DNA of 64,000 bases from Mytilus trossulus (lineage: Eukaryota), in NCBI RefSeq assembly GCF_036588685.1, contig NC_086382.1, positions 23,994,001 through 24,058,000 of the forward strand, read 5' to 3'. The notes beneath the pieces are model-generated. The model worked only from the letters and a program-made list of their open reading frames with translations, made no database searches and was not told the DNA's origin. Shown here in pieces: positions 6,215-58,161 of the stretch; positions within the stretch are counted from its first letter, which is position 1, and every line of letters starts with the position of its first letter. Made by a program: the position numbers and the translations under genes.

Positions 6215-7443
6215 TTATTTTCTTTTATTATATAATCGAAATAGTCTTTGGATCCTGCCCTTTAAGTACTTCATCCTCAACAACAACTGTTTATCTTGTT
6301 TAACTCCTTTTTTTCTAACAGATTTTTGTGCATTAATAACAATTACAGAAAACATATTCATTAAAAGGAACACAAATACAAATATAAACACAAGTATAAA
6401 AACAGGACCTAATTCAGGATAAATTTCAATATATTGATTAAAATTAGCTATCCTGAAAGTCCATTCCATCAGAGTCAGAAAACTGTATCCGAATGATCTG
6501 TAACCTGCTAACGAGGAGCCAAACAACAAATAACCACAACATGCAAAAGCTATCAATGAAAAAATATACATAAAAGTGAAATACTTTAAGGGTTTGTTCG
6601 CATATTCCATTATCGAAAATAAATATTTCAATTTATGAGTCAGCCTTAAAAGTTGCAGGAATTTCATCGATGCAATTGCGGTTAGCACAGCCAAAATGTA
6701 GAATAAAATGCTGTCCCATAAGATTGCTAGACTAAAATTTATGTAGCTGTTGTTACCAGAGTCTCTGTACTGACGTAGTACGATTGTTGTTCTTCTATAT
6801 CTCACTATAAATATCACAGTTGCAGTATAACACAATATTAACATGAACATGGAAAGCTTGTTCCAAAATATTTTAAAGTATGTACAAAAACCAATCAATC
6901 TTATCTTTCTGATCTCAATGAAAGTAAAAAGAAAAGTCAAAACTAAAAATATCACCTCAAACACCAACCACGTAATTTCTTCTGTAGACGAGTAGTCAGA
7001 TAAAGGCAAAGTATATATCTGATGTGATTTCGTTAGAGTACCAGGACTGCTGTACTCAAAAGCTATCAAAACTGAACTATACATATAAACATTAGGATTA
7101 TATAAAACGAATTCTATGAAAAAAGCTCTTGTTCTTATGTCAATCCATGACTTAAGATTTAACTCTGCAATCTTTGAAATAGCTGAGGAATCTGCTTTCA
7201 TATCAACTAAATAGCCACCCCCACTATATACTGCTCGATCGCCTATGTATGGCACAGAATCTAAGGCCCAACCATTTTGGTAGGACCATTCATCTTTGGC
7301 GGAGACCCCTTTTGACTGAGTCAGCCAGGACCTATTGTAATGGTTGTCGTCATCTTCTATCGAGTTCAATGAAGACGAACATTCAATACCAAGATGGTCA
7401 AAACCAAATAGTTTCTTCAACTTTTTCGGAAACTTACAGCTAT
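6215..7443 (-). CDS. Polycystin terminal exon: TOP domain, channel helices, pore, short basic C-tail
   Basis: Acceptor ttttcag at 7444; 401-aa ORF with YSGGGY, WIDIRTRA, LFGSSL..YRSF, LGP, LMNMF; stop at 6215. Confidence 0.95.
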
Positions 7444-10400
7444 CTGAAAAAAAATGTGTTCATGAATAGATGTTATATCTAGAAAGAACAATACATACTG
7501 TAAAGCGGCTTATTTTCGGGGAAGGAACACAATCGCCAAATTAAATTCCGCCAATTTAAAAGTGTACATATTGCACAGATATTGATAACACGTTTGAAAC
7601 GGCCAAAATAACAACAGCCAAAATAGTTCGTACACTTTATCAGATGAAAATCGAGAAATTTGACACCCGCGAAAATAACCCACTAAACAGAACAACATTG
7701 AAAAAGAGGAAAAAAAAAAAAAGGAGACATTACAGGAAGTATTATCACACTATAGCATGTGTAGTTTTGCGTGAGGATGACTACATGTTTTCCGTACCTA
7801 CCATGATTTTCTTAAACAGTGAATGCACTTAATTGAGGAAGCAATCCGGGTTTTGTTCTCTTTAATTTAAACAAAATTGCAGAAAAATCAAATATTAATT
7901 AGCTTTTCTTGTTAATTAGGTCTTACTATAAACGGATATGAGGTTCTCTTTTTTTTTACTTATAAAACGTTACACTTTTGGTGGTACGTCTAGGACAGGA
8001 GGAGCTGTTATTATTTTAAACACAATTTTTTTGAAGGGCTCAGTGTGCATACGTATTTTATTTGGACATTTTAACCCTATATACATGATATACAACGGTT
8101 TTATTTCTAAATTTGCAAAGTTAATATTAAACATAGACATATTCATCGTGATGCTTTAGTTGCTTCTTAATTATTCATATTTATACTATATGTTCACCCC
8201 AAGAAGATGGCATTGTTTTTACTTCAAAAGTACAACATATATTTAGTTTACAAATAATTGTGAAAAAATAATTTTACCGATTCATACACACATAACTATG
8301 GGTACATTTTAAAACATGAGGGTACTTTTTACCAAATACCGTTTTGATCCCTAACATCACTGAAGATACATTTATTGTCAAAATCCGGATCTAATGTACT
8401 AAAAAACTATTGACACATTATGTTTGTGGCATAAGATCGTGGCCACAAGTAAATTGTTTTCTGTTTAGTATTAAATTTATATTAAGATCCATTTTGTTTC
8501 ATCTTGTGATCAATTTTATTTGACAATCGCCATTGGCAGTCAGCAGGGTTAAAGAATATCAGTTGTTCGACCTGTTAGTCAAATGCGTTTTGTTTAAATA
8601 TACTTTTTCACTTTTTTGGTCTTTTGGAAAATGTTCTTTGTGCTGTTTTTAGACCCTTCTACAACGAAATTTGTTTTACATGCACACGTAAATCATAGTT
8701 TTCAATTTAGACTCGTTTATATTTTTTCGTTTGGGCTTGTATCATATTTTCCCTCCGGATTTAATGATCCGTTCATCCTATATTGACTCTTAAAATTCAA
8801 GAGTTTATCTAAAAATGAGGGCACTTTCTATATGGCCTTCCAAATACCGGTTTGATCCCTAACATGGAACTTAGTTAACATGGTTACTGTGATATGATCT
8901 TTCTAATTTTAATGCCAAATTAGAGATCTTATCCAATTTTCATGGTCCACTGAACATAGAAACTGAAAGTGCAGATTGAGCATCCGTGTACTTTGTGCAC
9001 ATTCTTGTTTTATAAACTGTTAATCTGTAAAGATGACCATATCAATGATTATTCATGGCAGCACAGAAGTGCCGGTTACTGCGATGGTGATACCCTTTGG
9101 GAATTAAAAGATATGTTTCTTAAATGGAGAATAGAGTAAGAAACTTCTGCTATGCCAACATCACCCGCACTGTTACAAGACTTTGGAGTCTTAATAAACA
9201 TGAAAAAGCCAACAGGAAGTTTAAAACCGAGTAATGTAGAAAAGTAAGGTATTCTTCTAAATATGTATCAACTATATAGTCACTGATCTCAGCTAATTTT
9301 TTTTATATTACCTGTTTGGACCCGTAACTGTTTCAAACGAAATTATCACAGTGGTGTAAATAGTTATTAGAGAAATCAGGATTGTATTTTAATACGCCAG
9401 ACGCGCGTTGCGTCTACATAAGACTCACCAGTGACGCTCATATCAAAACAGTTAAAAAGCCAAACAAGTACAAAGTTGCTAAATTTGATTTATATATTTT
9501 CTACCTACACATGTTAGAGTTGAAATTTCATTTAAAACACTTCCTTAATTTAATATAACAAATAAAACATAGAAAATCATGCTGAGTTTCATAAAAGATC
9601 TCATGTCTTGAAAATTAAAATTAAAACGTTAAAGAAATTGAAATAATTCTACGCAAAACGTGTCTTCAATGGAGAATAACGTTAAAACTTCTGCTTAGCC
9701 TACATCATTCGCAATAAAATTACCTGTTGGGACCCTTATCTGTTTCAAACGAAATTTTCCTAACAGTAGAAAATCATTTTCTGGAATCTTCTTTGACGTG
9801 TCATATGGTATTGTTCTATTCAATGGTGGTATTACACTTTCCTTGATATAAGTCCAGATATCACCACGTGTCTTTATCTGAAAAGCCATAATTAGGTATG
9901 AAATATAAAACGATGTACAAATTTGATTTTAATGTCAGCTTTTATGATATAATCAGCATAAAGAACAACCGTTGTAGTTTAAAAACGTTTGCTTTCTTTA
10001 CCTACACATTTAAATTTATTACAGTTTTTGTTAATATTTCGACTTTTTTTGAATACAGGAAACCAATTTATTGAAATGAACAATTATATTTTTTTCAGTT
10101 TGCATTAACCTTGATACTTTTTTTTTCTTGTGGCTATACGACAATGTTGGCACATTCTGTTTGATATGTTGTTTCATGTGTACTATTGTGTGTCTGTTTG
10201 TCCTTTTAATTTTTAGCCATGGCGCTGTAAGTTTATTTTCGATTTATGAGTTCGACTGTCTCCTGGTATCTTTCTCTCTTTTATACAGCTTTAATTGCCC
10301 TTTATAGTATTTACACTATTCACTTTATACCTGCTTTACTCGATAGCGAATGACACATTTTAGTATTTTCTATTTATTAAAATCATGCGTAAATCATACA

Positions 10401-13400
10401 CCATGTATGAAGTTTATTTCGTCTAATATTTAAGAAGCCTTCTGGCAATCAAATTTTCTCTTTTTCTTTCTTCTTAGAAGAAACGCCCGGTGTGATACAA
10501 TGTTTTTAAAATTATCTATTCGAATCCTATATTTATAGTATGGACTTTTAATTCCAGAAATGTTTCATAATTCCTTTATGTACTTGATAAAATGAAGAAA
10601 GAAATAAAATTTACATTTTCGTTTGTTTTCAACTTCTTCGGCACTTGGAACAAAGCAAAATCATACATCTTGAGTTCAGCAACTCTTGCAGTACTGATTA
10701 TAGTTCCAAAGTTTATGTTCATGCCCATTATTATGTTGAAGGTTTTTTGTATTAAATTTCCATGGCACTCTCGGTTTTCTTACAGACACTATGCCCTTGG
10801 TGCCATACAGAAAAAAAAACACTTCTATCTGTTAACTCCTTATATAAAATGTATCTTGTCTCATTATACAGAACTAGTTCTACTGAAAAAGGGAATGTAC
10901 CTAGAAGATACAAACGCAATGTTTAAGGTCATAGCAATATTTTAGACGAAGAGGTTACCGTCACTATATTAGCCATTATTTGAGTGAGTGCTTACTTCTC
11001 ATATATCTCAATGAATTGGAGATTTTGCATACCTTGAAAGGTGATTTTTGCTTCCTAGTTTGATATTTTTAATCAATATCGGTACAGATTTACTACTTAG
11101 ACCCTGAATTTATGGTAATTGTCAATTTTTAATTCCTCAGAAATAACACCCCAATCCATCAAATGCATTAACATATGGAGGTTAATACGCTACTCTCATG
11201 CATTAACATATGGAGGTTAATACGTCACTCTCACGCATGCTTATACTAAAAAAAAAGGTATATGGATTTGAAGTGTTTGTCAATTGCAACTAAAAAAACA
11301 CTATTACGGTAATTATTACAAATTCATGAATCGATACATTTAATCTGTTTCCTTATCCTCTATTTCTGTTACTTACGGTATCTACTTTCTTGTTGATAAA
11401 TATGTTATTGATGACTTGAGACTGCTGGAAACATTTCTCCACGGGACGTTGGTTGTGTACAACAAATAACAGTATAAATGTAAAAAAGACGTAAATGATA
11501 ATGTCTAGACATTTTGTGTTGACTTTTCTCTTTTTGTCAAGTTCTTGTTTAGCCTTTTTAAGATCTTTTCTTGTAGCATGCTCTGGGATAAAAGTCCACT
11601 TTTTGGATCTTCTTGGCCAAAAGTTGTCACTTTCTGAAATAAAAAGATAGATTTATTAAAACATATCAAGTGAAGTGTATATTATGTATTGACATTCTAA
11701 ACGTACTTTAAAAAAATTGTGGTCAGGATTATGAAATTGTTTTTTTCGCTGGTAACACATGATTTATGACTTTAATATGCTGACGTCACTATTCAAATTA
11801 AGAACTACATATTAAGTTTATTGTCATATTTTATGTTTAAGATTACAAAATCCAACAAATTTTTAAGATAGTGGAGATGTTCTTTCAAACTGTTTTATTG
11901 ATTTTAGTCATCATCTACATCTTATTTATCCAGTAAATAAACATTATGCAAAATCATGAACCTGTAGTTAAGTGTTGTCGTTAGTTCATTTCCGTCATAT
12001 TTGTTTAAGGTAAATTCATTTGATGAAAATGAGGCCGATTCTTTCCATTGTTTTATATTTTTCAAGTTGAATTTTTTTCATATCACTATACAGGAAGGCC
12101 ATTCGTTCGTATAGCACTTAAATGTCACAACCTACTGTGTCAATGAAATATTAAAGGTGCCATAAAAAAAAACCAGATCTCCATATGGAAAAGTAAGGTC
12201 CTTTTTGTAATGTCGAGGCCACCTATTTAATAAGTCAGACCTTCGTTTGACAAGATAAATGTGTGTTTGTTCTCAATAGTATGAAATGTTTCTGATTTTT
12301 TTTTTCAAAAGCATAACATATACACGAGATGTCCCACGAACTAACTTAGTGAATAGCTTATTGGCTGACAGAACGAAAGCAAATATTAATAAGTTACATT
12401 TGTCTTCGGAATTTAGCATTGCTGACTTCAAAGAGATATTTAATCATCAATCTTACCTTCAAATTCGCGTACAATTAAGGCCGGTCTATAATAAGTTATG
12501 TTTCTTCTTTTCAATAGAAATGTAAACAACAGCGCAAAAAAGACAACACTGGTTGGTTCCATCACAAAGCAATCATCAACAAAAGCTGTCAGAAAGGACA
12601 CTAGCCAATTCAAACTTTCATAGTAGCCATATTGTAATCCGTACAACATAACAAAATATGATGAAATCAAAGACGTCATAATTGTTGTGGTCCATGCAAT
12701 GTATATACCCCACCTAGGAAACCTGCAAAAGATCTTTAATTAACACTATTGTTTTGTTTAAACAATTCAAAGATTACCTTAAACTACTGATATGGATAAA
12801 ACTATTTTTTTGTTTGAATTGGAGTGATTCTTTTAAAGGATTCATACCTTCCTTTAGACAAGATACTTGTTTCTATGTTGGCTATTAGTTTTTATGAAAC
12901 AAACCAACACCAACTCTTTCAATTTGTCTTAAAGTTTGGAATGGGAAATATTACCTTAGCTGTATTTGGCAAAATTTTTTGGAATTTTGGATCTACTGTC
13001 CCAGGTAAGGGTCAGGTTTGGGATCCCGCTAATATGTTTAACCCCGCCACATTATTCATGTATGTGCTTGTCCCAAGTCAGGAGCCTGTAATTCAGTGAT
13101 TGTCGTTTGTTTATGTGTTACATATTTGTTTTTCGTTCATTTTTTTATATTAATAAGGCCGTTAGTTTTCTCGTTTGAATTGTTTTACATTGTCTTATCG
13201 GAGCCTTTTACAGCTTACAATGCGGTATGGACTTTGCTCATTGTTGAAGAACGAACGGTGGCCTATTGTTGTTAATGTTTGAGTCAATTTAGTCTTTTGT
13301 GGATAGTTGTCTCAATGGCAATCATACCACATCTTCTTTTTTTTATATCTTCAACTTTGTAGTTGTTTGGCTTTATAAATATTTTTATCTGAGAGTCACT

Positions 13401-16400
13401 GACGGGTCTTATGTAAACGAAACGCGCGTCTAGCGTACAAAATCATAATCCTTGCACTTATTAGGATTACTATTAGTGTTAAGCGTAGAAAGTCAAATAT
13501 TTTTATACTAGTTACTATTGCAAGATGAAAGAGTCTTAGATTGTATAACATATCAAACGAACAAATAAATAAGTGAGTCAGCAATATAAATAAAAGATTA
13601 GTAAATACAATAATAATATGTTTATAAATATGGTAATGAGAATACGTCAGTAAACTTACATTGATCGTTTTACTGTCACAATTGGAACCTCTCTGTTATC
13701 TGATCCTTTTTTATCACATGGCTCTGGACTGGTTACATCAATTTCCATATATCCTTCTCTACGTAGTTGTCTTGATCTCGATACCAGAAACATTTTAATG
13801 ATGACAAAGTTTATAGGAAACATAATTAAGCTACTTTCAAGACCAATGATGAAATCTTTCAGTGAAAATTCAAATTTAAAACCTGCTACATCAGAACTTA
13901 TCGTGCTTTCAGAAGGAATTCCATGGAACATTAAGCATGCCAACATAGTACACAGCAATAAAGACAATGCGCATGATAATCTTTGAACTCTCGTAAAATC
14001 ACTCCAAGGTGGTTTTGAAATTATACTGATCCACAAATGCGCTCTACGTAAATCTGTAGCTGTTCGCAGTAAAAACTGTTGCTTCATACTATAATTTGAT
14101 TCGATTGTCAGACAAACTTTGGCAGTCCCACTCTCCATTCCTAGCCAACTATCGTGGTAAAATGTATAAACTTTCGTAGTTTGTAAGTCTTGTATTAGTA
14201 CTCTCGAAAGGAACCTAAAATATATGATTCGAAATGTCTTCATTTATTTTCTGTAAAACATTAATTAATTAAATAAGATACTCATTGTATTTTAAACTAT
14301 AAATGCTAGTTAAACTATAAAAAGATAACAAATACAAAAAGAAGTCATAATAAATCATTAAAAAAACACGTTACTTAAATCCTGTCCTTTGGTATCATGT
14401 GAATCGTTCCATAAGTTATGGACAACACAACGTATCTCTTCGTCTTTTCTTTCAAAAAAAACCCACAACATGTTGCTGGTTTCGAGTCAATTAGCAAGTT
14501 CATTTAAGAAGATAACCATGAATGCATCGAAGAAAGGATTACAAAAAGGAAATAAATCCGTATTTACAAAACAGGAATGATAAGGTTTTAAAAAAATATA
14601 TTAAAAAAACGTAATACAGATTAACAATTAATTTGATATGCAAAGTGTTTCAATTCAATGTCATAAACTTGGGCCGATATTGCTGTATTGGTAAAATTTG
14701 CCATTTTTCCACAGGGTTTGTTTACCTCTAAAAGTTTTATCTTACGACAGCCTAATTATTGGGTTTGCTGTATCAATAACCATATGTACAGAAAATCTCC
14801 TTTTATCTTCATCATATTTAGCAAAAATAAATGTACAAGAAACTTAGATATGAAATTTCGCAATATGACTTATTTTTTAAAAGATTTGTTAAACAGCTGA
14901 TATTTTTTCCGTTTGCTTCCTGCATAAATTTTCATAAATGATTTTTCAAAAAAAATATTGTTTCGACTAATTATATCCATTGTACAATGTTGTATCGTTG
15001 TACTTTTTGACCTTTGTCATTAAAAACTTTTGGATGCTGTCACTTGCAAAATATGTCCAAATTTTGCTGACACAGATAATGGCTATCCAATCACAATGTA
15101 CTAGCCAACGTTTAATATAGGAAGTAAAATTTAACTCTTGAAAGGGTCTTTTTTTCAGTATACAAAATTATCTAAACAAAAATATTTTTGGTTGTTTATT
15201 ATTCCCTTCAAAGCCTCTCACAGTTATTGTAGAGATGGCAATCTTGATTTTCACTTTCTTAATGCATACAATGTCTTACCTTTATAACGATCGACATGGA
15301 AGTGATATAAAACTTATTTCTATATAAAATGTTGTTATTAAGATGTATTTTATTGTGTGACAACATAATGACCAGTTTACTTTAAAAGCGGTCATTTGAA
15401 CTTTATGAAAAAAAAGTTTGAAAATGATTTATATAAAACAAGTGTATATGTACGCGAATTTGCTCCAATTAGTAAGAAAATACTTTCTAAAATCTCATTA
15501 ATACAATTTCTAACAGAATCTTAATATATTGAAATAAACGATGTCATGCAAACCATGATGGCGAGGAACCACTGTTATCATGCCATATAACCACATTCAC
15601 AACGTCTCCTATATCATAGGAAGAAGTAATAAGAAACCAGTCTTCAGCCCCGGTTGTAAATAAAACTTGCGACGATGAGCTTCTTGTCAAACAATGTCTT
15701 GCAGTATGTCCGTGTTTGCCTTTGATATAGCATGAAACATTTGCTGTAGTTCTAGCGTCATACCGCCACCCAGTGACAATGCACATAAGATATTTAAACG
15801 GTTCTGAAGGATCACTTGAACAAGGTGTCACTATACCATCCTACAGAAGATAAGGTATTAATCAAGTCAATTATTTCATTTAAATGTCATGATAAACTAT
15901 GTTGAACTTTACAATCGTCAGAGAGCTAAAACTGGCATCCAGCGTAAAAAATCATAACATTTAGAGCATTGTCTTGTATAACTCGATTTAACTTTATACA
16001 AGAGTACACATTTAAACTTTCAATCTTATTTTTAACTACTAAAAGAAAATATGAATAGGATGAATGTAGATATAATTTTGACCTTATTATTGAATATAGT
16101 TTTTATTACAACACATTATCAAAGGATCAGTTTGTGTTTTGTTTGTATTCTAAGTTTTAGATAAATTGATTACAAACACATTTCAAATAAAAAATAAATA
16201 AATTTAGATTGAAAATCCCGTAGGCACACTTCTGTATATATTTCTTTAATATTTATAAAAGTTACTTTTTTTTTTATTTCATATGCCTCCAGTGTTTATC
16301 ATGTTTATACATCCTTGGATCTAATACTCATTGTGTTTAGTGTTTCTTAATTAAAATGAACCAAGAAGATCATGTTGAATGTGTTAAATCAACTTATAAT

Positions 16401-41181: not shown

Positions 41182-44100
41182 CTGAAATTGATAAATGAAA
41201 TAGTATAAAGAAGATTCAACGCAAACTGAATTAAATGTTGCATCTTTAAAATTCATATTTATCAAATTTTCTGCAATTTAACTGTCAGTTCCTGTGTGAA
41301 TAACAGAAAATTTGTACAATTTTTGATTTTTTTTAGCATTAATACATAGTTCTGATTTTATGACCAGTGTCATTTAACATTTTTCCTTCTTTGTTTTATT
41401 ACCTTTTCACTATTATTGATAAATGATTCCAAGAACTGTTCTCATCCTCTTTCAGAGTGTTGCAGTTCTTATATAAATGTACGTGTGCTTGTATGTAGTA
41501 AATTTAGACAAAGATTTTGCTTCAAAAAGATTAAACATGGGTTATACCAGTTTTTAATACAGACAATTTAATACGTTGCAGGGATTGTGGTATTTTTAAA
41601 TGTTGATTGTGATCCTTAATTAGGATTGTAAACTTTTTTGAAGCATCAACATTTTATAGAAATTTTCATTATCAAATCAAATAATGAACTCGTGCTAAAA
41701 CTATTTCATTACTCCAATTGCTTAATATAAGAAGTGATATGTGAATGACAATAAAACAAAATCAGCTGTTTACAAACTTATTCAGTGTGAAAATATTTCG
41801 TAAATTATCGCATAAGATTCAATTGGTTAAATACATGACCTAACTATTACCTTGGAAAAAAGACGACGAATAAACACACAGCAAATATAAACAGCAGTAG
41901 AAACGCAAGGGCACCAATAACAAACATCAAAATGTGGAAAGAGTCTTCTGTAAAATAAAATCTCAAATGATTATATCACCAATTTTGGCAAACGAATACA
42001 TTTGGTCATCACATAAACACTTAAAATGATATTATTGTGAAGATGTGCTATAAAAATAAATGATATGATATGGTTTTTTTTTTAAATTTATTTAAAAGAA
42101 AAAAAGCCGAAAAGTATAACAGTAAAGTTATACCGATCTCCGATTGCTGAATTAGCCCCTATAACCTTATATTCACTTGAGTGTATTTAAACTATAGAGA
42201 AATTTTTCTATCTTTCAGATCAAACTTTGGGGTTCATGTTGCTCAATATTTACTTCCCAGGTTTTGTGTACAATTCTTTTGACCGTTTTAGTTTTCTTTG
42301 CCAAGGTATTGTCAGGGTTTTTTTCACGCAGTAGTTCAATTATCCCTTTAGTATATTTCGTTATCTTCTATATATTTTTCCATTTAATTATTAACTGACA
42401 ACGCCATGGCTAAAAAGAATAAGACAAACAGACAAACGAAAGGAAAAAGCACTCAGAGAAAAGTAAAGATTGAGCAAAACGACCCCCCCACCTTTTTATA
42501 TGGTAATACGGCATATTAATAAAACCATGTAAGTACAAAATAAAACTTTAATGACACTGTAATGGCTGCCTTTACACTGAAATGATCTTGATGTGCAATG
42601 TATTTAGAAAAAAAGTGGCTCTTAAAAATAGCTCTTATTCTTTGAAAAATGAATTGAACTTACTAGAGTACTACAGATGTGAGTTTAATATTTACGACAA
42701 GTAAAAAATCTTTCTTTATAATAGTATGTCTGACATACTAAATTATAAACCTGGTACCTTTGAAAACAATTTTTTAGACAATATTTAACCTGATGATTGC
42801 TCTTGAGGTCTTGAAACAGCTGTGGTAATCTGTGCCTCTGGGATTTCCAATAAGCAATCGTTAGTGTCAGCCACACACTGCCCAGAACTGCATCTATGTA
42901 ATCCCTCGGGACATAGTTGTACAATCGTACCTTAGAAATAAACAAAATCGCATGTTTGCGATATTTTTTACTTCTTTCATGTGTTACTATTTATATTACA
43001 GATGTTTCATATTTCCGCTATTCTTCTTTTACTAACGAAAAAATCCGATAATAAATCGCATACGAAATAAAGTCCGATAACAGTACAATAGCATTTTTTT
43101 CATTTATCTTTCTGTCATAATTATCCTACCGTATCTAGATTGAATAACTTGTACATCCTTTACGTTCAATTCTAATTTCATTATGTTTCTTACAATGGGA
43201 AGGTGGAGAGGCTCAGGTGCTTTATTGATAAAGGGTATTCTTGATGGAAAAATACTAAAAGTAGGCCTATGGCTTATTATAATCATCCGAATAGAGGTAA
43301 TGTGTAGATTCTATAACTTAACCATTGAGCTAATTTTTTGAAAAGTATTTTTTAAGTATTACAATTTTAGATTGGCAATATTATGCAAATGTCTAGTCTA
43401 GTATATAACCTAAGACCTTCAAAGTTTTGCCTTTAAACAATCTTGTGGAAAGAACAATATATGACAGGCTTACATGATTGCATCATAGAAACATGAAGTA
43501 AGCTTTAAATAATTAGCCCTGCTTATTCCCATTTAACCACATTGTACTACTAAAATACCACCTCCTTGTTCTATGTATATCCAATAAGTCTGTTGTACCA
43601 TTCGAAATATATTTTTTCAATAGTTAAATATTTTTTGTCATGATTCGATACACTTACAATTTAATATTATGCCTTTGGAATTAGTCAAACTGTTTTGATG
43701 AAATTGTTTACAAATAGAGAAGTACATTTGTGTAGAAAATCTACTTCCTTCATATCATGATAACGAGTAATGTCTTCAAACATAACAAAAAAAAATATAG
43801 CGCAGTTAGTTTTGTTATATTACGTGTAATATACTTATATCTATATGATCTCTAACGAATGCTCACATTGCTTTAAAAAAAATGGTACTAATAAAAAAAA
43901 AAAAAAGGGTGTTGACTGGGAGAGAGAAAATGTTTTTATAAATTAGCAAAATCATTCATCTTGTAACTTAAAAACCAGCATCGCGTGACGAAAATATAGA
44001 AAATAACACTTTTGAAAGTACCTACATGAATAATCTTTTCTAAATAGCCAATAGTGTAAGGAGAAAGAGAAGGATTTTCAACCTAAAATTGAGTCAAATA

Positions 44101-50100: not shown

Positions 50101-53100
50101 AATGTTTGTTATTCTTTAACTAGTGAGGGCCTTGATGAATGTTTACTGCAGAATAAATTTTATCCCTTGAAATATTTTTTTTTTTAACAGAAGTGTTATA
50201 ATCTCGAGAGGAATGGAGAATTTGTTTAAAATTCATTTCTCTAGAAACATAATGAATTATGTGGTTCATTCTTTAAAAGGCAGATATTCTTATATTCCTA
50301 GAGAGCAGAGATTATGCCTTAAATGTAAAACATTAGAAAATGGAAAACATTCTATATTAGATTGTAAATTAAATATGGAACTAAGAAACAACTTTTTTAA
50401 CCGTTTGGATTTTAATTTTTCTGTTAAAAGTTTATCTAATGAAAAAAAGTTGAATTTTATAATCAATTCGTCAACATCATCACAAGTTAATAAATTTGGG
50501 TCCTAAAACAAAAGGTCACTAGAACTGAGGACAGGGGACACTGAAATATTAACTGTATATGAATGAGTGTGTATATATATATGAGAATTATAATTAAACT
50601 GTTATAGTTTTTTTTACTAATTTTGTATGTCACAAACTTAATGTTTTAAAAAAAGTTTATATGCTAATAAATATTTGAAATTCTTTAAACTAAAAAAACT
50701 ACCTACGTGGTTCGCAGGTATTATAATCGGCGTTGTAGTACTGCGTTGTTTCACATTCACATAAACCAGAAGCACAAGTTAGGGGCGAATAACAACTGCT
50801 TACTGATGTGGAACAAGGTTCTTTGTATCTTCCAACTGTAAAAAAAAGAAATCATGAAATAATTGTTTGGGAATGGTGAGCAAAAAGTAAAGATGGACGG
50901 GTTGTGGTACTTACCATACTTCAATTCATTCTGACAAATAGGAATTAGGGCTTTACTAGTACCTGTATATTTACCTGCTGATCGAAAAGGAAGCTTTATA
51001 GATTTATAGATAACTTAATTATTCAGGCCTGAATAGAAGAAAACGGACTACCTACATGTACGTATATGTTATATAGACATATTTCAGGAGAAGAATTATT
51101 ATACATTAAATGACCGTGATGATATATTTAAATATAAATTAATATTTGCATAAATTTAAGTTTGAAAACGCTGTTTCTAAAAAGAAGGCGGACCGATAAT
51201 GGCATGTATCTGTCGTTTAGCACACAAACTATAAAGTAATAACTTGGTCTTGATTAAAGTATACAAATTATTTTATGTTCTATTTTGACAAGACAACAAT
51301 AGTGTTATATTTCAAAATTAGTTTAGTCTGATAATTTTGCTGTAGAATTTTACACTCTTTGTATCTAAGCACTTAATAATAAATGACAGGACCTCTGATA
51401 ACGCTTTAAATTGGAGACTTTTTTTATAAATATTATACATCAGCGATATTCATACGTAGTATCAGCACTAGCTTGCAACAAGAGGTTTAAATTTCAGTTT
51501 TATAATAAACATCTATCTGTATTAATATCATATTAATTAATAAACACTTACATGTGTTACAGGTATTAGTATCTGTTTGGTAGAAGTGATTTGTTTCACA
51601 TCCACATAAACCAGAGGCACAAATAAGGGGAGAGTAACAACTGCTTACTGCTGCCGAACATGGTTCATTGTATCTTCCAACTTTAAAAAAAAAACAGTAC
51701 ATGTAAGATGTTTTAATTAGTTTTTGACAATTAAGATCTAGGTCAATTTTAAAACGAATACTTATAAAATGAAAAGGGGGCTATCCGTATTATGATATCA
51801 TTCAATTACAATTAAGTTTGAAAGATATAGAGCGGTATCAACAAACATTCATTCAATGTTGACAAGATATAATAAAAAGATCCTTAATACTTATCAAAGG
51901 TACCAGGATTATAATATTGATCTTTTTATTAGTTTAAACATATTTATTTATAGTGGATTGGGAAACAAGTTTTGCAACTTATATTAATCCCTCTCCATCT
52001 TTTTATTGCAGTGTATTATACTTTTAGCCTTCAAAATAAATAACAGAAGTTCATAAAATTCTTTGATTTGAAGCATTTGAATGAAACAAAATATATGAGA
52101 GACAGCCATAAATCCTATACATGCTATAGCAGCTATCATCAGGTGGCAATATGTATAAAAAAAAAAGGTATAAGAATTTGACTTTCTTATGTTATAGCTG
52201 TTACTTAATTTTTACTACAGCTGACCAAGATATAAGATGCATTGCAGACCAATTAGGTCTAACATGACATATGAATAACAACTCACATGATCATATAAAT
52301 AAACCTGACTGGCTGATTAAACCATACACATTGCATATTTTTTTCAATAAAATTGACATATTCTTGAAAGCTTTGCTTTATTTGAAAAATACAGAATTTT
52401 GTCATATTTCACACTTTCAACAATGATAATTAACACCTACATGTATTGCAGGTATTATGATCTGCCTTGTAGTAATTATTTGTTTCACATTCACATAAAC
52501 CAGAGGCACAAATAAGGGGAGAGTAACAGCTGCTTACTGCTGTCGAACAAGTTTCTTTGTATCTTCCATCTGAAAAAAATGTTGCATTCAGTTTTGGATA
52601 ATAATGTTTTTTTAATAACATATCACTATTTTTTTCTATAATCAAAATTGTCAATTCCTTAATAATTAAATACTGCATATATATAAAATAAAATCTATAT
52701 GAACCTTGCTTTTCTATTAAAAACAAAACTGACTTGGTAATACATTTTTATAGCATATTCGGGTTTTTTTACGCAATCTACATCATATTTGCCAGAGACA
52801 AGTGTGTAAAGTGATCAAGTTTATATATCTGAATAACAACTTACAGACCTTTAGTAATTATCCTGATAGGTTAAAAAAACAGATCTTTCTATATATTTTT
52901 TTTAAACATAAATACCTTAATTTTTTAAATACAATGTATAATTTTCGCTTGTTTAAATATCTTTGTATCGTCCTCAATTTTTTCTTGAAGGTAATAATGA
53001 ACACTTACATATGTTGCAGGTATTACTATCTGACTTATAGTAATGATGTAGTTCACACTCACACAAACCAGATTCGCAAGTCAGGGGAAGGTAACAGCTG

Positions 53101-56100
53101 CTTACTGCTGTCGAACAAGGTTCTTTGTATCTCCCAACTGTAAGTAAAAAAGTCATGATTTACAATGATGGTGAGTTATGTGTTAAGTTTTGCCTAGTTT
53201 ATAAACCCAGTCAATTAGATAATATAACATTTATTCAGCATTTTCCAAAAAGAATGTTACACTTACAAAATGGATAAAAATACAACTCTCAGAAACTAAG
53301 TATTAATTTCAACCTTTTCTTGATCGGTACTTTTGATGAAAATCATTAGAATTACAGTTTTATTGAAATTTGGCTCTAATGCACTCTTATTTAGTATGTT
53401 AATTTAAATGCGTGCATGATAGTTCCTTATGTTTTGTGCAGGCTGTGATATAGTTCTCATTTGTAATATATGACTATATAAATGGAATGTTGCCTAAAAA
53501 TGGAAGCTCAATTGTCGTACAAAACACATTAAATATCAGATGGACAAGAACTGTCATATTCTTGACTTGGTACAGGCATTTCAAATGTAGAAAATGGTAG
53601 ATTAAACCTGGTTATATAACACTTATATATATAGATCCTACAATAGTTCTATCATAAAATACTAAACTTAATTAAGTTTAACATTTTCATCATGTACAGA
53701 TAAAACCCTAATATATCAAAATAAATTGATCAACATATGTCTTGTTTCTACAAAGAATCAGACATGAACATGATTTTTTTAATTATTTATCTCAAAATGT
53801 ATTAGCTTTTATAAATGTATCATCAATTATATTTTTGACATTAAGGTGGTACCTAACACTACAGGGAGATAACTCTGTAAAGTCTTCTTAACGTTTTAAT
53901 TACGTTGTGTTGTGAAAGGAATATTAAGCTTCTCAATGATCAAAATTGGTGTTTGTCAAATTGCTATGTAACCAGTGTAATTTTTCTGACAAAACGGTTG
54001 GTTAAAAAAAATTATAAATTTTTATATTTTTGTTTAAGTGTCAAAGTAAATACTTTGACAAAATTTTATGAAAATTAAACGAGCCAAATTAATTTAAGTG
54101 AAAGTGTTGGGTACCACCTTAAAATATTTGAATAAGACAGATAACAGTAATGATACATATCAATTTACCAAAGTTTGTTTACCTTAGGATTTAGACTTCA
54201 AATGAGAATGTTCGATAGATTTCCCTTTTTTGCTAAAAATTAAATTAAAACATAATTTTTTTTCTTTCAACTATAATTAAAAACACCTACATGCATTGCA
54301 GGTATTGTCATCTGCCCTGAAGTAATGATTTGTTGCACAGTCACATAAACCAGAGGCACAACTAAGAGGAGAGTAACAACTAGTTACTGCTGCCGAACAA
54401 GGTTCTTTGTATCTTCCAACTGCAAAAGAAAAATCATGATTTCACTGTCCGATATCTCATTTAGTTTAAGATAATACACAATATTTTTCAAATAGATAAG
54501 AACATTTAAGTTTTACAGAAAATTATATTTTTTAATAACAGATTACATGCATGAAGGAACACACAGTTACTTGATATTCTCTTGAACCTTGCATTGCTAA
54601 AATTTTGTTGTAAAAGCATTTTATAATGGTCTAAATGAACATGAAGGTTTTACAACTTTTAATTGCGCATCCTGTTTTTACCATACAATATGCATGAAAG
54701 TCTTGTGTGCTTTGTGCATACAGTTCTTACACATTCGCACCTATATTTTCCAAATGTTTCAAAGTGTAGACTTAACACAATTGATTGGACGTGGTGTCAT
54801 ACTAAGAAGTATTCTACTCATATATAATATGACAATATGGAAAAAGGTGTTAATCAGTTCAAAAATGCGCGGATACACTACACATATCTATAAGCGGACC
54901 AAATAGAAATCTTGTTAGTCGTACGGAGAAGTGTGCAAAAAATATACAGTCAGGGGCATAACTAAAAATGATAAAGGGCTGCACTTCAGCGCATGATACG
55001 CCCGTTGCTCTTTTAACTTGTCTTTTATGCTTTAAATGAATTTATATGATCAACTAGAAATAGTGTGAGCCCTGTCAAATACCTCCCCCCCAATAATAAA
55101 TAAAACAGCGGGACGGACGGACGGACAACGGTATACCATAACATGTCCCATCGATGGGCGTATAATTATACTCCCTTGTAAAGTTTACTTAACAGAACTA
55201 AAATCAAACCGAATAGTAGGGAATAGTTTAACAGATTTGATCTTTTGATTAATAATAAATGTGTTGAAAGACATACGGTTGCCCATATTTGCTTATACGC
55301 ATTTCATTTAAACTTTAGTTGATAGCAATTACATTGGCAATCATACCACATCTCCCTATTTTACTATTTATCATACTGCGTTCTCTCTCAACTTTAATAG
55401 TAAACACCTACATTCGTTGCAGGTGTTTTGATCTTCCTTGTAATAAATATCTGTTCCACAACCACATAAACCAGAAGGACAAACAAGAGGAGAGTAACAA
55501 CTGTCTACTGCTGTCGCACAAGATTCTTCGTATCTTCCACCTGTAAGAAAAAGGCGATATTGATTAAATTGCTTGATGTTGCCTTTATTCTTTGATTATT
55601 TACACTCTTGTTCAAAGACATTTTAATAATTGCACAAGTTAAACATCCCTCGATAAATCGTTCATACAAAATGGGTAAATAATTTTTAATTCAACAAGAT
55701 GAAATGATTAATGTACTCCAGGCAAACTATGTCAAATATGAGAATATTACTAACAAAAGACTTGTTCAAATTACTTTTTTTGAAAGGTTGATAAAACGAT
55801 TCCGCCAAAATAATTATAAAGCAGAATGTATATCAATTTAGAAGGTATGTAGATCCTGTACAATATTCTTTTTTTTTTGACTAGATAGTAAATACATTTG
55901 TATTTGTGAAAATCTATTATTTCCAAACTTATTATCAACACCTACGTGTGTTGCAGGTATTTAGATCTGCGTTGTAGTATTCTGTTGAATCACAATCACA
56001 TAAACCAGAGGCACAGATAAGAGGAGAGTAACAACTGGTTACTGCTGTCGAACATGTTTCTTTGTATCTTCCAACTGTAAAAATAAATCATGATCTTATT

Positions 56101-58161
56101 GTTTAATATTGCATTTAGTCTTCTTATATATAAAATCTTGTCAAAGTTGATAAACTCTAAATAATTCATTCTCACCACATGAATAGAAAAACCAGTAGTA
56201 ACTTGATTTAAACTTGATTTTTGTTATAAGATTTTAAAAGAAACTACAGTTTTTAGTATGGATATTCTTTTACGAATCATAAGAAACACGGACATTTAAT
56301 TTTTTTGTGGATATAACCATAAACATGATAGATGATTTTAAAGCATGCAATTGCAAACGTTGCCGTACTTATCATTGTCTAATGCTTTAACAGTTCTGAA
56401 AAGCAAATCTGTAGACCAAATTCGAAGCTCATGTGATTAACAAATAATTTTGACAATATTAATTGTAAGCGAACAGACAAAACGATGAAGGCAGTATAGC
56501 TACACTACCGAATAGTATTAGTATACACCTAACTATACAAACATAAAGAGTCGTAAACATTAGCATTAGACACCTACGTGCGGGACAAGTATTATAATCT
56601 GCGTTGTAGTACTGCGTTGTTTCACAGTCACATACACCAGAAGCACAAACAAAGGGTGTGTAACAACTGGTTACTGCTGTGGAACATGGTTCTGAGTATC
56701 TTCCAACTGTAAGAGAAGCAATCATGATTTTAAATTTTTAAAATTGAATTCAGTTATGGATAATTATCTATTACCTTTATCAACATTTAACCCGTCAATA
56801 TACAATGAAGTTTGATCTTGCAAGCAGCGACAAAGTTTGATCCATTATCTTTAAATTTTTAAAAATAGAAAACGAAATTTGTAAGCTAAATGTTTTTTTC
56901 TGAAATTTTAAAAGAAAAAAAAAACAGATAACCTGAAGTTGCACTCGCTGTCGTACTAAGCACAGGGTTAAATATTCAATGCATTCTATACCAACGATGT
57001 TAACTATGACATGATAAGACTAATGACACAGACTTTGCCTAATATACATCATTAGTCAATAATAGTTTTCCCTTTGTTAAAAAGTTTAATAATAATGTAG
57101 CTTTAATACAAAGATGCCAAATCCGTACTATCATTTTCTATGTTTAGTTGACCGTAAAAACCCTTATTTGGTATTAAAATTAGAAAGATCACCTCATTGG
57201 GAACAGGTGTACTAAATTGATTGGATTGATTTCAACTTCATCAAAAACTACCTCCACCAAAAAATGTTACCAAAAACTTTAACCTGAAGCGGGACAGACG
57301 GACTGACAAACGAATGAATGGAAGAAAGATAGGACGGAGAAACGGACGGACGGGCAGGTGCACAGACCAGAGAACATAATGCCCATATATGGACCATTAA
57401 AATGAATTGAGAGTTTATAAAAATAATTTTCTTTCACTTTCACAAACAAGAATTTGTAACGCTTCATCCTTTTACTATTCGTAATGAATACCTACACGTG
57501 TTACAGGAATTATCATCTGTATTGTAGTAATGATTTGTTTCACATCCACATAAACTAGAAGCACAAATGAGGGGAGAGTAACAACTTGTTACTGCTGACG
57601 TACAAGGTTCTGTGTATCTTCCAACTGTAATGAAAAGCAATCATAATTTAAATACTAAATATTGCCTTTTTCTCTAAATAAGTAAAAAAAATTGCAGTCC
57701 TTTATACTAAACAATTTTGATTGTTGCAAGTTGATAATTCTTCATATCTTTTATACAAAATGAGTAAACGAGATGTATACAAAAAAAATCAACTTCAACA
57801 CAACAGAAATATCAAATGTGTGTTATCTAAATTATTTAACTATGACATATGACTAACACCACACAATCTTGAATTAACTAACACGAATAATTTATCAAAA
57901 TATTTATTAGTGATATAATTAGCATAATTCAGAAGAAAGTTGAGAATTTGACCAATAATTACATTTTGGTATTATGAAAATGTTTGTCTATCTAAAATCT
58001 GTTAGGTAAACATAAATTAAATAAACACCTACATGGGTTACAAGTATTATCATCTGTATTGAAGTAATGATTTGTTTCACATCCACATAAACTAGAAGCA
58101 CAAATAAAGGGAGAGTAACAACTGTTTACTGCTGTCGAACAAGGTTCTCTGTATCTTCCAA
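41100..58161 (-). CDS. Single-pass Cys-rich membrane protein (14 EB-like repeats, kringle, LDLa-like/stalk, TM, short tail); separate gene or short isoform of the polycystin locus
   Basis: 18 phase-consistent exons, 2372 nt, ending in TGA at 41100-41102; first exon not identified. Confidence 0.82.
41851..41947 (-). CDS. Transmembrane exon
   Basis: DSFHILMFVIGALAFLLLFIFAVCLFVVFFPR; acceptor ttttattttacag, donor gtaata; phase 1-2. Confidence 0.8.
42790..42930 (-). CDS. Truncated LDLa-like Cys motif plus S/T/Q stalk exon
   Basis: TIVQLCPEGLHRCSSGQCVADTNDCLLEIPEAQITTAVSRPQEQSS; phase 1-1. Confidence 0.75.
44661..45250. mobile_element. Kolobok-like MITE
   Basis: TTAA on both flanks; imperfect 16-bp TIR GGYGGTATRGGTGTCT. 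Confidence 0.8.
45585..45830 (-). CDS. Kringle domain exon
   Basis: C..GMEYRG..PCQRW..NYCRHPD..PWCYT..EMCDIPFC; six Cys; phase 1-1. Confidence 0.95.
46230..46358 (-). CDS. EB-like repeat exon 14
   Basis: 129 nt, phase 1-1; GTHKDLCSTSVRSCITPLICNAGICDCETTQYYNENDNTCSI. Confidence 0.88.
47349..47477 (-). CDS. EB-like repeat exon 13
   Basis: 129 nt; GRYNETCSTSVNSCYSPFICVSGLCGCATTHYYNEDFSTCKP. Confidence 0.88.
47834..47962 (-). CDS. EB-like repeat exon 12
   Basis: 129 nt; GRYKDSCSTAVSSCNSPLICNSGVCECETNLFYNEEHNTCNA. Confidence 0.88.
48189..48317 (-). CDS. EB-like repeat exon 11
   Basis: 129 nt; GRYREHCSTAVSSCYSPFVCASGLCECDTTHYYNADSNTCNT. Confidence 0.88.
49295..49570. repeat. Helentron-associated (HINE-like) repeat with GGAC microsatellite
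   Basis: Starts aacaag; related copies at ~28385-28630 and ~57110-57395, partial inverted copy at ~8900-9008. Confidence 0.65.
50250..50675 (+). mobile_element. 3' remnant of a non-LTR retrotransposon (CR1/L2-like ORF2 C-terminus)
   Basis: GRYSYIPREQRLCLKCKTLENGKHSILDC..LR, a CCHC-type tail motif; AATAAA near 50667. Confidence 0.7.
50707..50835 (-). CDS. EB-like repeat exon 10
   Basis: 129 nt, not in ORF track; GRYKEPCSTSVSSCYSPLTCASGLCECETTQYYNADYNTCEP. Confidence 0.88.
51552..51680 (-). CDS. EB-like repeat exon 9
   Basis: 129 nt, AAG acceptor; GRYNEPCSAAVSSCYSPLICASGLCGCETNHFYQTDTNTCNT. Confidence 0.85.
52441..52569 (-). CDS. EB-like repeat exon 8
   Basis: 129 nt; GRYKETCSTAVSSCYSPLICASGLCECETNNYYKADHNTCNT. 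Confidence 0.88.
53009..53137 (-). CDS. EB-like repeat exon 7
   Basis: 129 nt; GRYKEPCSTAVSSCYLPLTCESGLCECELHHYYKSDSNTCNI. Confidence 0.88.
53845..54118. mobile_element. Kolobok-like MITE
   Basis: TTAA on both flanks; TIR GGTGGTACCYAACACT. Confidence 0.85.
54291..54419 (-). CDS. EB-like repeat exon 6
   Basis: 129 nt; GRYKEPCSAAVTSCYSPLSCASGLCDCATNHYFRADDNTCNA. Confidence 0.88.
55412..55540 (-). CDS. EB-like repeat exon 5
   Basis: 129 nt; GRYEESCATAVDSCYSPLVCPSGLCGCGTDIYYKEDQNTCNE. Confidence 0.88.
55946..56074 (-). CDS. EB-like repeat exon 4
   Basis: 129 nt; GRYKETCSTAVTSCYSPLICASGLCDCDSTEYYNADLNTCNT. Confidence 0.88.
56578..56706 (-). CDS. EB-like repeat exon 3
   Basis: 129 nt; GRYSEPCSTAVTSCYTPFVCASGVCDCETTQYYNADYNTCPA. 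Confidence 0.88.
57496..57624 (-). CDS. EB-like repeat exon 2
   Basis: 129 nt; GRYTEPCTSAVTSCYSPLICASSLCGCETNHYYNTDDNSCNT. Confidence 0.88.
58033..58161 (-). CDS. EB-like repeat exon 1
   Basis: 129 nt; GRYREPCSTAVNSCYSPFICASSLCGCETNHYFNTDDNTCNP. Confidence 0.88.

What the first reader, a model, noticed from the sequence alone, without database searches (positions are those of the whole stretch)
6215..58161. One ectodomain, two possible anchors: candidate switch between a single-pass receptor and an 11-TM polycystin
Seen: block A ends in its own TM exon (41851-41947) and stop exon (41100-41181). Block B starts at 35400 with a phase-1 internal EB exon, and I found no convincing signal-peptide or start exon in 35401-41099. 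The stalk exon 42790-42930 ends in phase 1 and joins in frame either to the TM exon (G+AA) or to 35400 (G+GA). Both blocks use the same EB family: exon 32103 has the same cag|TTGGAAGATAC start and GATGATAATACTTGTAA end as exon 58033. Inference: alternative terminal-exon choice could give a ~790-aa anchored receptor or decoy, or a ~2300-aa EB17-kringle-GAIN-PLAT-channel polycystin, reminiscent of the IgM C-terminal switch. The alternative is two tandem genes sharing a repeat family, which would still be a linked receptor/channel pair.
Basis: partly seen in the sequence, partly recalled or inferred. Interest (0 to 1): 0.85.

Follow-up and report, generated by a model that had tools for sequence, protein, structure and literature searches.

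The report
Polycystin gene with alternative membrane anchors
Assembled RNA shows that one kringle exon in this invertebrate locus is spliced either to a small cassette ending in its own membrane helix and poly(A) site, or past that cassette into a full polycystin-1-like 11-helix channel receptor, so one large ectodomain gets two different anchors.

Summary
The scan had not noted this on other DNA.

**Exon structure (minus strand).**
- Fourteen 129-nt six-cysteine exons, all phase 1-1, are followed by a kringle exon (45830-45585).
- A cassette follows: stalk exon (42930-42790), TM exon (41947-41851), and a terminal exon (41181 to about 40037) with a stop codon and AATAAA.
- After a 4.6-kb spacer made largely of repeats come four more Cys modules (from 35400), a GPS motif, PLAT, the polycystin/TOP domain and a PKD channel.

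**RNA evidence.**
- In run X3, two contigs join the last 30 nt of the kringle exon (45585) directly to 35400, in frame.
- In all four runs, contigs join the terminal exon to upstream letters. Their lengths fit TM + stalk + 29 nt of kringle, so the assembly forks exactly at the kringle donor.
- No first exon for block B was seen in the spacer.

**Paralogues.**
- Paralogues on contig C7 carry kringle, EB and polycystin exons without the cassette.
- A partial duplicate 165 kb away carries EB5-kringle-stalk-TM-tail without a channel part.

**Reading.** It resembles a calcitonin/CGRP-type alternative last exon rather than the IgM switch.

**Caveats.**
- The evidence is contigs, not raw reads.
- The gene's 5' end lies outside the window, so a shared promoter is unproven.
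- "EB" falls below Pfam's cutoff.

The parts
46230..58161 (-). Array of 14 six-cysteine EB-like exons, each 129 nt and phase 1-1: 58161-58033, 57624-57496, 56706-56578, 56074-55946, 55540-55412, 54419-54291, 53137-53009, 52569-52441, 51680-51552, 50835-50707, 48317-48189, 47962-47834, 47477-47349, 46358-46230
   Evidence: Exon scan and borders. Alignment A1 has 6 invariant Cys. Pfam EB is matched only weakly. Run X2 contig 16 carries 1069 letters upstream of the terminal exon, enough for the kringle plus about 4.5 of these exons (inferred from length).
45585..45830 (-). Kringle exon, 246 nt, phase 1-1, with consensus donor TGTA|GTAAGT. This is the branch point of the two mRNA forms.
   Evidence: PF00051 at E 3e-20; sequence. 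The X3 loose end at 35400 matches 45585-45614. TM-form contigs of X1 and X3 end 29 nt into this exon.
42790..42930 (-). Stalk exon with 4 Cys, specific to the short form, behind a weak AAG acceptor
   Evidence: Sequence. Genome-wide it is found only here and in the A-only paralogue. dN/dS against the paralogue is 0.44.
41851..41947 (-). TM exon, specific to the short form, encoding a single hydrophobic helix
   Evidence: Sequence. 81% amino-acid identity in the paralogue; dN/dS 0.31.
40037..41181 (-). Terminal exon of the short form: the basic stop-transfer tail RRKRR...DEPC, stop at 41102-41100, then about 1.06 kb of 3'UTR
   Evidence: Contigs of X1, X2, X3 and X5 lie on 40037-41183 and run on upstream (table 8).
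40034..40039 (-). AATAAA poly(A) signal of the short form, followed by a U/GU-rich stretch
   Evidence: Sequence. X1 and X2 contigs end at 40037.
35401..40033 (-). Spacer skipped by the long form; no unique exon found. Repeats lie at 35883-36020, about 36530-37280 and 38846-39095.
   Evidence: Contig depth is zero outside the repeats. Repeat copy numbers. The candidate signal-peptide ATG at 35972 lies inside a repeat and has no joint to 35400.
32103..35400 (-). Four EB-like exons of the long form: 35400-35269, 34609-34478, 33355-33215, 32243-32103. The acceptor at 35400 is the distal partner of the kringle donor.
   Evidence: Exon scan. Contigs of X1, X3 and X5 end sharply at 35400. Counterparts exist in the C7 paralogues.
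17554..31080 (-). Ectodomain exons between the EB modules and the GPS motif: 31080-30968, 30259-30134, 29763-29660, 27762-27432, 19327-19165, 17954-17554. The intron 27431-19328 holds a transposon.
   Evidence: A frame-consistent chain with canonical splice sites, collinear with the C7 paralogues. No Pfam REJ hit.
16423..16653 (-). Exon with the GPS motif CEVDHLTDF followed by the first helix of the 11-TM part
   Evidence: Translation; hydrophobicity; 68% identity to the C7 paralogue.
15554..15840 (-). PLAT/LH2 exon
   Evidence: PF01477 at E 1e-14.
9724..14214 (-). Exons 14214-13660, 12713-12457, 11633-11377 and 9877-9724: helices 2-6 and the start of the polycystin (TOP) domain
   Evidence: Hydrophobic segments; Polycystin_dom at E 0.003; conserved in the C7 paralogues.
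6215..7443 (-). Last exon of the long form: polycystin domain, PKD channel helices, stop at 6217-6215
   Evidence: PF20519 at 8.5e-24 and PF08016 at 1e-31; exon chain.

Best explanation
This is one transcription unit with an alternative-last-exon choice at the kringle donor (45585).

**Proximal choice.** The donor is spliced to the weak AAG acceptor of the stalk exon. The TM exon and a terminal exon follow, with polyadenylation near 40037. The product is a type-I single-pass membrane protein: at least 14 EB-like modules, a kringle, a Cys stalk, one helix and a 27-aa basic tail.

**Distal choice.** The three cassette exons and their poly(A) site are skipped, and the donor is spliced in frame to the strong CAG acceptor at 35400. 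The product carries the same N-terminal ectodomain followed by 4 more EB-like modules, a GPS-containing region, PLAT and an 11-helix polycystin-1-like channel part.

**What is shown.** Both sets of exons are present in RNA-like contigs. The 45585->35400 junction is seen directly. The reading frames, splice sites, poly(A) signal and domains are read from the sequence.

**What is inferred.**
- The kringle->stalk->TM->tail chain, from contig lengths.
- That both forms start at the same promoter.
- That the choice is regulated.
- That the short form acts as a tethered competitor or partner of the long form. It has a free-standing relative, the A-only paralogue.
For: **Distal junction.**
- X3 contigs 17 and 18 lie on 35301-35400 and continue with 61 and 29 letters.
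- Their consensus matches the last 30 nt of the kringle exon with 1 mismatch. The paralogue's kringle end differs at 4 positions.
- X5 contig 25 has 277 letters beyond 35400, which equals 246 nt of kringle plus 31.

**Proximal chain.**
- X1 contig 8 and X3 contig 24 each have 265 letters beyond 41183.
- That equals 95 nt of TM, 141 nt of stalk and 29 nt of kringle.
- Both downstream exons start with G. A k=31 assembly graph that forks at the kringle donor would therefore break at exactly this point.
- X2 has no cover on exon 35400, and its TM-form contig runs on for 1069 letters without a break.

**Relative depth.** Contig depths on exon 35400 are 17-29 in X1, 6.5+10.9 in X3 and 4.4 in X5. On the short terminal exon they are 16, 7-8 and 3-5. 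The long junction is therefore not a rare by-product, although the tool warns that depth is a poor measure.

**No separate start for block B.** No joint into 35400 from the spacer was listed. The spacer's contig cover is on repeats. Exon 35400 is an internal phase-1 exon with no ATG or signal peptide.

**Paralogues.**
- The C7 paralogues, 52% identical in the channel exon, have a phase-1-1 kringle exon 7 kb upstream of collinear EB and polycystin exons, with no cassette.
- The C10:23.35 Mb paralogue has A-type EB exons upstream.
- The short-form exons are conserved in the partial duplicate, with dN/dS 0.39 and p 0.02.

**Long reading frame.** A frame-consistent exon chain runs to the stop at 6215.
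Against: - The runs are labelled 'RNA?' (a guess) and are assembled contigs, not reads. Transcript starts, full-length linkage and abundance cannot be read from them.
- The proximal chain is inferred from lengths; its letters were not shown.
- The direct junction letters come from one run (two contigs).
- The 5' end and promoter lie outside the window, so a shared start is unproven.
- X2 holds words from the 3' part of block B but shows no cover on exon 35400. This could mean a second, internal start for B.
- The cassette is absent from all other B paralogues, and the A-type unit exists alone 165 kb away. This also fits an A-type gene that landed upstream of, or inside, a polycystin gene.
Confidence: 0.7

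Rival explanations
1. Two tandem genes. A is a single-pass EB-kringle receptor and B is a polycystin-1-like gene with its own promoter and start exon, not yet found. The 45585->35400 junction is a read-through (conjoined-gene) transcript that skips A's last exons, with no separate biological role.
For: - The A-type unit exists alone as a partial duplicate with intact frames and no B exons within 45 kb.
- The stalk/TM cassette is found nowhere else, including next to the other seven B paralogues.
- X2 has the A form and B 3' words without cover on exon 35400.
Against: - No B-specific exon or joint was seen in 35401-40036 in four runs, and cover there is on repeats.
- B's first known exon is internal-type, phase 1, without a start codon.
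- Depth on exon 35400 is equal to or above that of A's terminal exon in X1, X3 and X5.
- Both X3 contigs at 35400 lead to the kringle exon.
- The C7 paralogues keep a kringle exon in front of the same EB exons.
Confidence: 0.2
2. The long polycystin form is the only functional product. The stalk-TM-tail cassette is a recently acquired cryptic terminal exon set that yields a non-functional truncated transcript.
For: - The cassette is lineage-specific.
- Its first acceptor is a weak AAG.
- The stalk and TM exons are only slightly more conserved than their introns in DNA.
Against: - The cassette encodes a textbook type-I anchor: a hydrophobic helix followed by RRKRR.
- It is expressed in all four runs and in both coded organisms.
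- Its frames are intact in both copies, with dN/dS 0.39 (p 0.02); the paralogue's kringle has dN/dS 0.06.
- The tail keeps its basic start (RRKRR here, RKKR in the paralogue) and its DEPC end despite a 15-nt deletion.
Confidence: 0.07
3. Assembly artefact: the kringle->35400 contigs are chimeras made by the assembler from similar repeat exons.
For: The locus is full of similar EB-like exons, and the contigs are short.
Against: - The kringle end and exon 35400 are not repeats of each other. EB-B1 is 52-61% identical to the A-type exons, and the kringle exon is unrelated to them.
- The join falls exactly on a GT donor and an AG acceptor and keeps the frame.
- Two contigs show the join directly, and the same break position recurs in two runs.
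Confidence: 0.03

Closest known systems
Polycystin-1-like proteins (PKD1, PKD1L1-3, PKDREJ, sea urchin REJ3): 11-TM receptors with GPS, PLAT and a TRPP-like channel part
   Same: The long form has a GPS motif directly before helix 1, PLAT in the first cytoplasmic loop, about 11 hydrophobic segments, and the polycystin (TOP) domain and PKD_channel in the last six helices.
   Different: - The ectodomain is built from at least 18 EB-like six-Cys modules and a kringle.
- No Pfam REJ hit was found.
- A full-text search for polycystin + kringle + PLAT gave no paper on such an architecture.
- The gene has an internal cassette that ends the protein with its own helix.
Skipped-terminal-exon (alternative last exon) switches such as calcitonin/CGRP (my own knowledge, not tested with tools)
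   Same: One donor has two acceptors. The proximal one is weak and leads to an exon set with its own poly(A) site. The distal one is strong and is used when the proximal set is skipped.
   Different: Here the proximal set is three exons, and both products are membrane proteins that share a large ectodomain. Regulation is unknown.
Single-TM isoforms of adhesion GPCRs (Drosophila Cirl 1TM, GPR126): bioRxiv 10.1101/2023.01.11.521585
   Same: A GAIN/GPS-family receptor gene also produces an isoform whose ectodomain is held by a single helix. In that paper the 1TM form binds and tunes the 7TM form (abstract).
   Different: According to the abstract, Cirl 1TM arises by intron retention. Here a dedicated stalk+TM+tail cassette upstream of the GPS region is used, so the short form lacks the GPS region altogether.
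IgM membrane/secreted switch
   Same: The C-terminal fate of a shared ectodomain is decided by competition between splicing and a proximal poly(A) site.
   Different: IgM uses a composite exon with an internal donor and switches between secreted and anchored forms. Here whole exons are skipped and both forms are anchored.

Membership tests
Polycystin-1-like (11-TM PKD1 family) | PLAT/LH2 domain after the first helix | tested here: met
   PF01477 at E 1e-14 and 55.7 bits (cutoff 23) on exon 15840-15554, the next exon after the GPS/TM1 exon.
Polycystin-1-like (11-TM PKD1 family) | C-terminal six helices of TRPP type with a polycystin/TOP domain | tested here: met
   PF08016 at 1e-31 and PF20519 at 8.5e-24 on the last exon. 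PF20519 at 0.003 on exon 9877-9724.
Polycystin-1-like (11-TM PKD1 family) | GPS motif / GAIN domain directly before helix 1 | tested here: inconclusive
The motif C-E-V-D-H-L-T-D-F lies about 25 residues before the first helix. There was no Pfam GPS or REJ hit on single exons at E<=0.1.
Polycystin-1-like (11-TM PKD1 family) | About 11 transmembrane helices | tested here: met
   A hydrophobicity scan of the exon chain gives 11 segments. This is a crude method.
Kringle domain (PF00051) | Full-length match above the Pfam cutoff | tested here: met
   E 3.2e-20 and 72.7 bits (cutoff 34.3), profile positions 2-79 of 79.
EB module (PF01683) | Match above the Pfam gathering score | tested here: not met
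   Three of 18 modules match at E<=1, the best at 0.011 and 15.9 bits against a cutoff of 24.3. A profile search of PDB sequences found nothing. They are best called EB-like six-Cys modules.
Alternative last exon switch (skipped terminal exon type) | One donor joined to two alternative acceptors in RNA | tested here: met
   The distal join 45585->35400 is read directly.
Alternative last exon switch (skipped terminal exon type) | The proximal exon set has its own poly(A) site that is used | tested here: met
   AATAAA lies at 40039-40034, and X1 and X2 contigs end at 40037.
Alternative last exon switch (skipped terminal exon type) | Both forms start at the same promoter | not testable with these tools
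   The 5' end lies outside the window. Contigs cannot show starts.
Adhesion-GPCR-type 1TM isoform (Cirl 1TM) | Made by intron retention | tested here: not met
   The short form uses separate stalk, TM and tail exons upstream of the GPS region. The comparison is with the abstract read.

The most novel reading that the evidence does not exclude
This is a regulated isoform switch in a polycystin-1-like gene. The same EB/kringle ectodomain is placed either on a passive single helix or on a GPS-bearing 11-TM channel receptor. The tethered short form tunes or competes with the long form, as Cirl 1TM does for Cirl 7TM. The short isoform has since been copied out as a free-standing gene by partial duplication, so one of the two isoforms became a gene of its own.
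Probability: 0.35. Interest if true: 0.75.

Novelty: new variant of a known kind. Interest (0 to 1): 0.6.

Why it matters
**Open question it bears on.** Polycystin-1-family and adhesion-GPCR proteins share the GAIN/GPS design. It is debated how much of their biology is carried by the ectodomain alone and how much by the membrane-spanning part.

**What this locus offers.**
- It is a natural gene that makes both versions from one donor site, with a dedicated anchor for the ectodomain-only form.
- It gives a clean system to test ectodomain-only function in a polycystin. Deleting only the cassette, or only the distal exons, would separate the two.
- It documents a kringle- and EB-like-rich ectodomain that a full-text paper search did not turn up for this family.
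- With its partial duplicate, it shows a possible route from alternative isoform to independent gene.

**Practical consequence.** Automatic annotation is likely to split or mis-fuse this locus.

Tried and rejected
- **Kringle exon against 1.84 billion protein representatives.** The best 150 hits were all multi-kringle proteins ranked by summed score. The four hits whose length or kringle position most resembled the locus (P0139, P0121, P0088, P0091) were read and are unrelated.
- **The search for homologous proteins with the kringle exon.** It returned only P0151, an 80-aa frame that reads on into the intron (…CSKY), so it comes from a genomic contig. It gives no junction information.
- **Closed or exhausted tools.** The 66%-identity B paralogues and the region upstream of the window could therefore be placed by coordinates only.
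- **Candidate signal-peptide exon for block B (ATG 35972, MVSYSVLFFTLSLLK, GT at 35926 or 35885).** Rejected for three reasons:
  - It lies in a dispersed repeat at 35883-36020 with at least 40 copies.
  - The X5 contigs there continue into letters not found in the window and agree only 0.72 with each other.
  - No joint to 35400 was listed.
- **Contig cover at 36430-37430.** It lies on a very abundant repeat with 1939 candidate copies, so it is not a B exon.
- **Stalk/TM/tail homologues in the C7 paralogues.** None was found even at E 50.
- **Start exon for block A.** None was convincing within window 58162-64000 or the next 20 kb. ATG 62243 (MSVQCIVIILFMT) has a poor donor.
- **Earlier gene-conversion reading.** My earlier reading of gene conversion at the paralogue's kringle was wrong. 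Within the exon bounds dN/dS is 0.06.
- **Joined protein model.** All searches were exon by exon.


Full report
**Setting**

The window is G000:C10:23994001-24058000 of a 1.3-Gb, AT-rich assembly. It looks to me like a bivalve mollusc, but that is an impression and was not tested. The window has no N runs. Everything described here lies on the minus strand.

**Check of the observation**

Stop-to-stop frames and an exon scan found fourteen 129-nt exons between 58161 and 46230.
- Each sits behind a pyrimidine tract and an AG, and in front of GTAGGT or GTAAGT.
- Each enters and leaves in phase 1.
- Each encodes about 42 residues with six invariant cysteines (alignment A1).

The exons that follow were read from the sequence:
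- **Kringle exon 45830-45585:** 246 nt, phase 1-1, donor TGTA|GTAAGT; PF00051 at E 3e-20.
- **Stalk exon 42930-42790:** four Cys, behind the acceptor tttatttctAAG.
- **TM exon 41947-41851:** encodes EDSFHILMFVIGALAFLLLFIFAVCLFVVFFP.
- **Terminal exon from 41181:** encodes RRKRRVQVLPAKSDHNRMVGNTTDEPC followed by a stop.

A helix followed by RRKRR is the usual signature of a type-I anchor.

Block B starts at 35400 behind ttgtttatttaCAG with an internal phase-1 exon. Three more Cys-module exons follow.

Further downstream, Pfam confirms PLAT, Polycystin_dom and PKD_channel. The frame at 16668-16387 carries CEVDHLTDF directly before a hydrophobic helix.

A frame-consistent chain of exons with canonical sites runs from 35400 to the stop at 6217-6215. 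It encodes about 1580 residues with about 11 hydrophobic segments.

Two corrections are needed:
- The modules are only EB-like. Three of 18 touch PF01683 at E<=1 and none reaches the cutoff.
- The array does not begin in the window (see "The 5' end is open" below).

**RNA evidence**

The look-up of sequencing runs, given B's 3' part, returned runs of two coded organisms whose kind is not on record ("RNA?"). I laid X1 and X2 (organism A) and X3 and X5 (organism B) on window 35230-41229. All four are Logan contigs.

They behave like RNA:
- Depth is zero over unique spacer and intron sequence.
- Pieces stop exactly at 35400 and at 41181/41183.
- X5 differs least from the window.

*Short form.*
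- Contigs cover 40037-41183 in all four runs and continue upstream: by 265 letters in X1 and X3, 126 in X5 and 1069 in X2.
- The two intron letters before 41181 are AG, like the end of the TM exon. So 265 equals 95 (rest of TM) + 141 (stalk) + 29 (kringle).
- The letters themselves were not printed, so this chain is inferred from lengths.
- The X1 and X2 contigs end at 40037, inside the AATAAA at 40039-40034. A U/GU-rich stretch follows.

*Long form.*
- Pieces of X1, X3 and X5 end sharply at 35400.
- In X3 the two contigs continue with 61 and 29 letters. Their 30-letter consensus matches window 45585-45614, the last 30 nt of the kringle exon, with one mismatch. By my own reading of the sequence, it has four mismatches to the paralogue's kringle.
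- The join is GT-AG exact and in frame: A+GA gives Arg.
- X5 contig 25 has 277 letters beyond 35400, which equals 246 (kringle) + 31.

*The fork in the assembly.*
- Both downstream exons begin with G. The first k=31 word that tells the two paths apart therefore holds 29 kringle letters.
- The TM-form contigs of X1 and X3 stop exactly there, and the short X3 contig starts exactly there.
- So the assembly graph forks at the kringle donor in X1 and X3.
- In X2, which has no cover on exon 35400, the TM-form contig does not break.

*Depth.* Depths on exon 35400 are equal to or above those on the short terminal exon in X1, X3 and X5. The tool warns that depth is a poor measure.

**Is there a separate start for block B?**

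- No joint from the spacer into 35400 was listed.
- My scan found one signal-peptide-like frame (ATG 35972). It sits in a dispersed repeat at 35883-36020 with at least 40 copies. The X5 contigs on it lead to letters absent from the window.
- The other covered stretches are repeats too: 36530-37280 has 1939 candidate copies, and 38846-39095 has depth in the thousands.
- One loose end remains. X2 holds 15% of the sampled words of 6001-16000 yet shows nothing on exon 35400. This may reflect low cover or an internal start.

**Paralogues**

The channel exon has seven relatives in the genome: five at 66% identity and two at 52%.

*C7 loci (52%).* I fetched and compared the two loci.
- Each has an EGF-like exon and then a phase-1-1 kringle exon.
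- Seven kb later comes an EB exon like 35400, then one like 32243, then every B exon in the same order.
- Nothing resembling the stalk, TM or tail lies in between.

*C10:23.35 Mb (66%).* This paralogue has A-type EB exons upstream on its strand.

Cys modules in front of a polycystin body recur in these paralogues, with a kringle in the C7 pair. That argues against block A being a foreign gene that merely sits upstream.

*The cassette.* Genome-wide, the stalk exon occurs only here and at C10:24206491.

*The partial duplicate at C10:24.19-24.21 Mb*:
- Homology runs from the intron after exon 51680-51552 to window 37445.
- It holds five EB exons, a kringle, stalk, TM and tail.
- No B exon lies within 45 kb downstream, and no start exon was found within 13.6 kb upstream.
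- Its frames are intact. The TM acceptor is shifted by 3 nt. The tail has a 15-nt deletion but keeps the basic RKKR start and the DEPC end.
- Against the window, dS is 0.17-0.31. dN/dS is 0.06 for the kringle and 0.39 for stalk+TM (Fisher p 0.02).
- This indicates constraint on the short-form exons in at least one copy.

**The 5' end is open**

- No convincing start exon lies in 58162-64000 or in the next 20 kb.
- Twenty more A-type exons lie at C10:24070923-24099345 on the same strand, followed by a multi-kringle cluster.
- Whether these belong to the same gene could not be tested.
- The figures of 790 and about 2270 residues are therefore minimum sizes.

**Mechanism**

The best reading is an alternative-last-exon choice at a single consensus donor.
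- The proximal route uses a weak acceptor (AAG) followed by a poly(A) site.
- The distal route uses a strong acceptor (CAG) 10 kb away.
- This layout resembles skipped terminal exons such as calcitonin/CGRP (my knowledge) more than the IgM composite exon.
- The short product is a tethered ectodomain without the GPS region. The long product puts the same ectodomain, minus the stalk, on a GPS/PLAT/11-TM body.
- The function of the short form is inferred only. It could be a decoy, an adhesion molecule or a partner of the long form. The nearest tested precedent is the Cirl 1TM isoform, which binds Cirl 7TM and is needed together with it (bioRxiv 10.1101/2023.01.11.521585).

**Rivals**

- A read-through chimera of two genes remains possible (0.2).
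- A non-functional cassette (0.07) and an assembly artefact (0.03) are unlikely, for the reasons given in their entries.

**Literature**

- Full-text searches for polycystin + kringle + PLAT found no paper on such an architecture.
- A search for polycystin-1 with alternative polyadenylation and truncated isoforms returned no papers.
- These are absences in an open-access library and do not prove novelty.

**Limits and rules**

- The joined protein model was never searched or folded; all searches went exon by exon.

**Verdict**

I rate it a new variant of a known kind, with interest 0.6.

Noticed in passing
G000:C10:24070923-24099345 and 24102874-24133893 (upstream of the window, minus strand): Twenty more A-type EB-like exons, then a cluster of many kringle exons with three EB-like exons among them. 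This may be one giant gene continuous with block A, or separate genes. An 18.7-kb gap separates window 58161 from the next EB exon.
   Followed up: partly
window 38846-39095 and 4075-4320: A repeat with an open frame (…GATCGA.S.Y..APE…FW.GSC…). Its contig depth is in the thousands in all four runs, so it is a very highly transcribed dispersed element.
   Followed up: no
window 19328-27431: The intron between exons 27762-27432 and 19327-19165 is 8.1 kb. It holds the element another reader noted at 20008-27284, including frames with tandem 'GPT..QRWANV'-type repeats at 26511-26061 and 24063-23782.
   Followed up: no
G000:C10:24193600-24214100 (loci L014-L016): A partial duplicate of EB5-kringle-stalk-TM-tail, with intact frames and a strongly constrained kringle (dN/dS 0.06). 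No start exon was found within 13.6 kb upstream. How it is transcribed is unknown.
   Followed up: partly
G000:C7:26123552-26160121 and C7:16394372-16436770 (loci L025-L029, L032-L037): Two near-identical polycystin-1-like paralogues with the order EGF-like exon, kringle exon, EB, EB, GPS, PLAT, channel. This looks like a recent large duplication on contig C7.
   Followed up: partly
window 35230-41229, run X2: X2 carries words from block B's 3' part but shows no cover of exon 35400-35269, and its TM-form contig is unbroken. This may reflect tissue-specific use of the short form, or an internal start for B.
   Followed up: no
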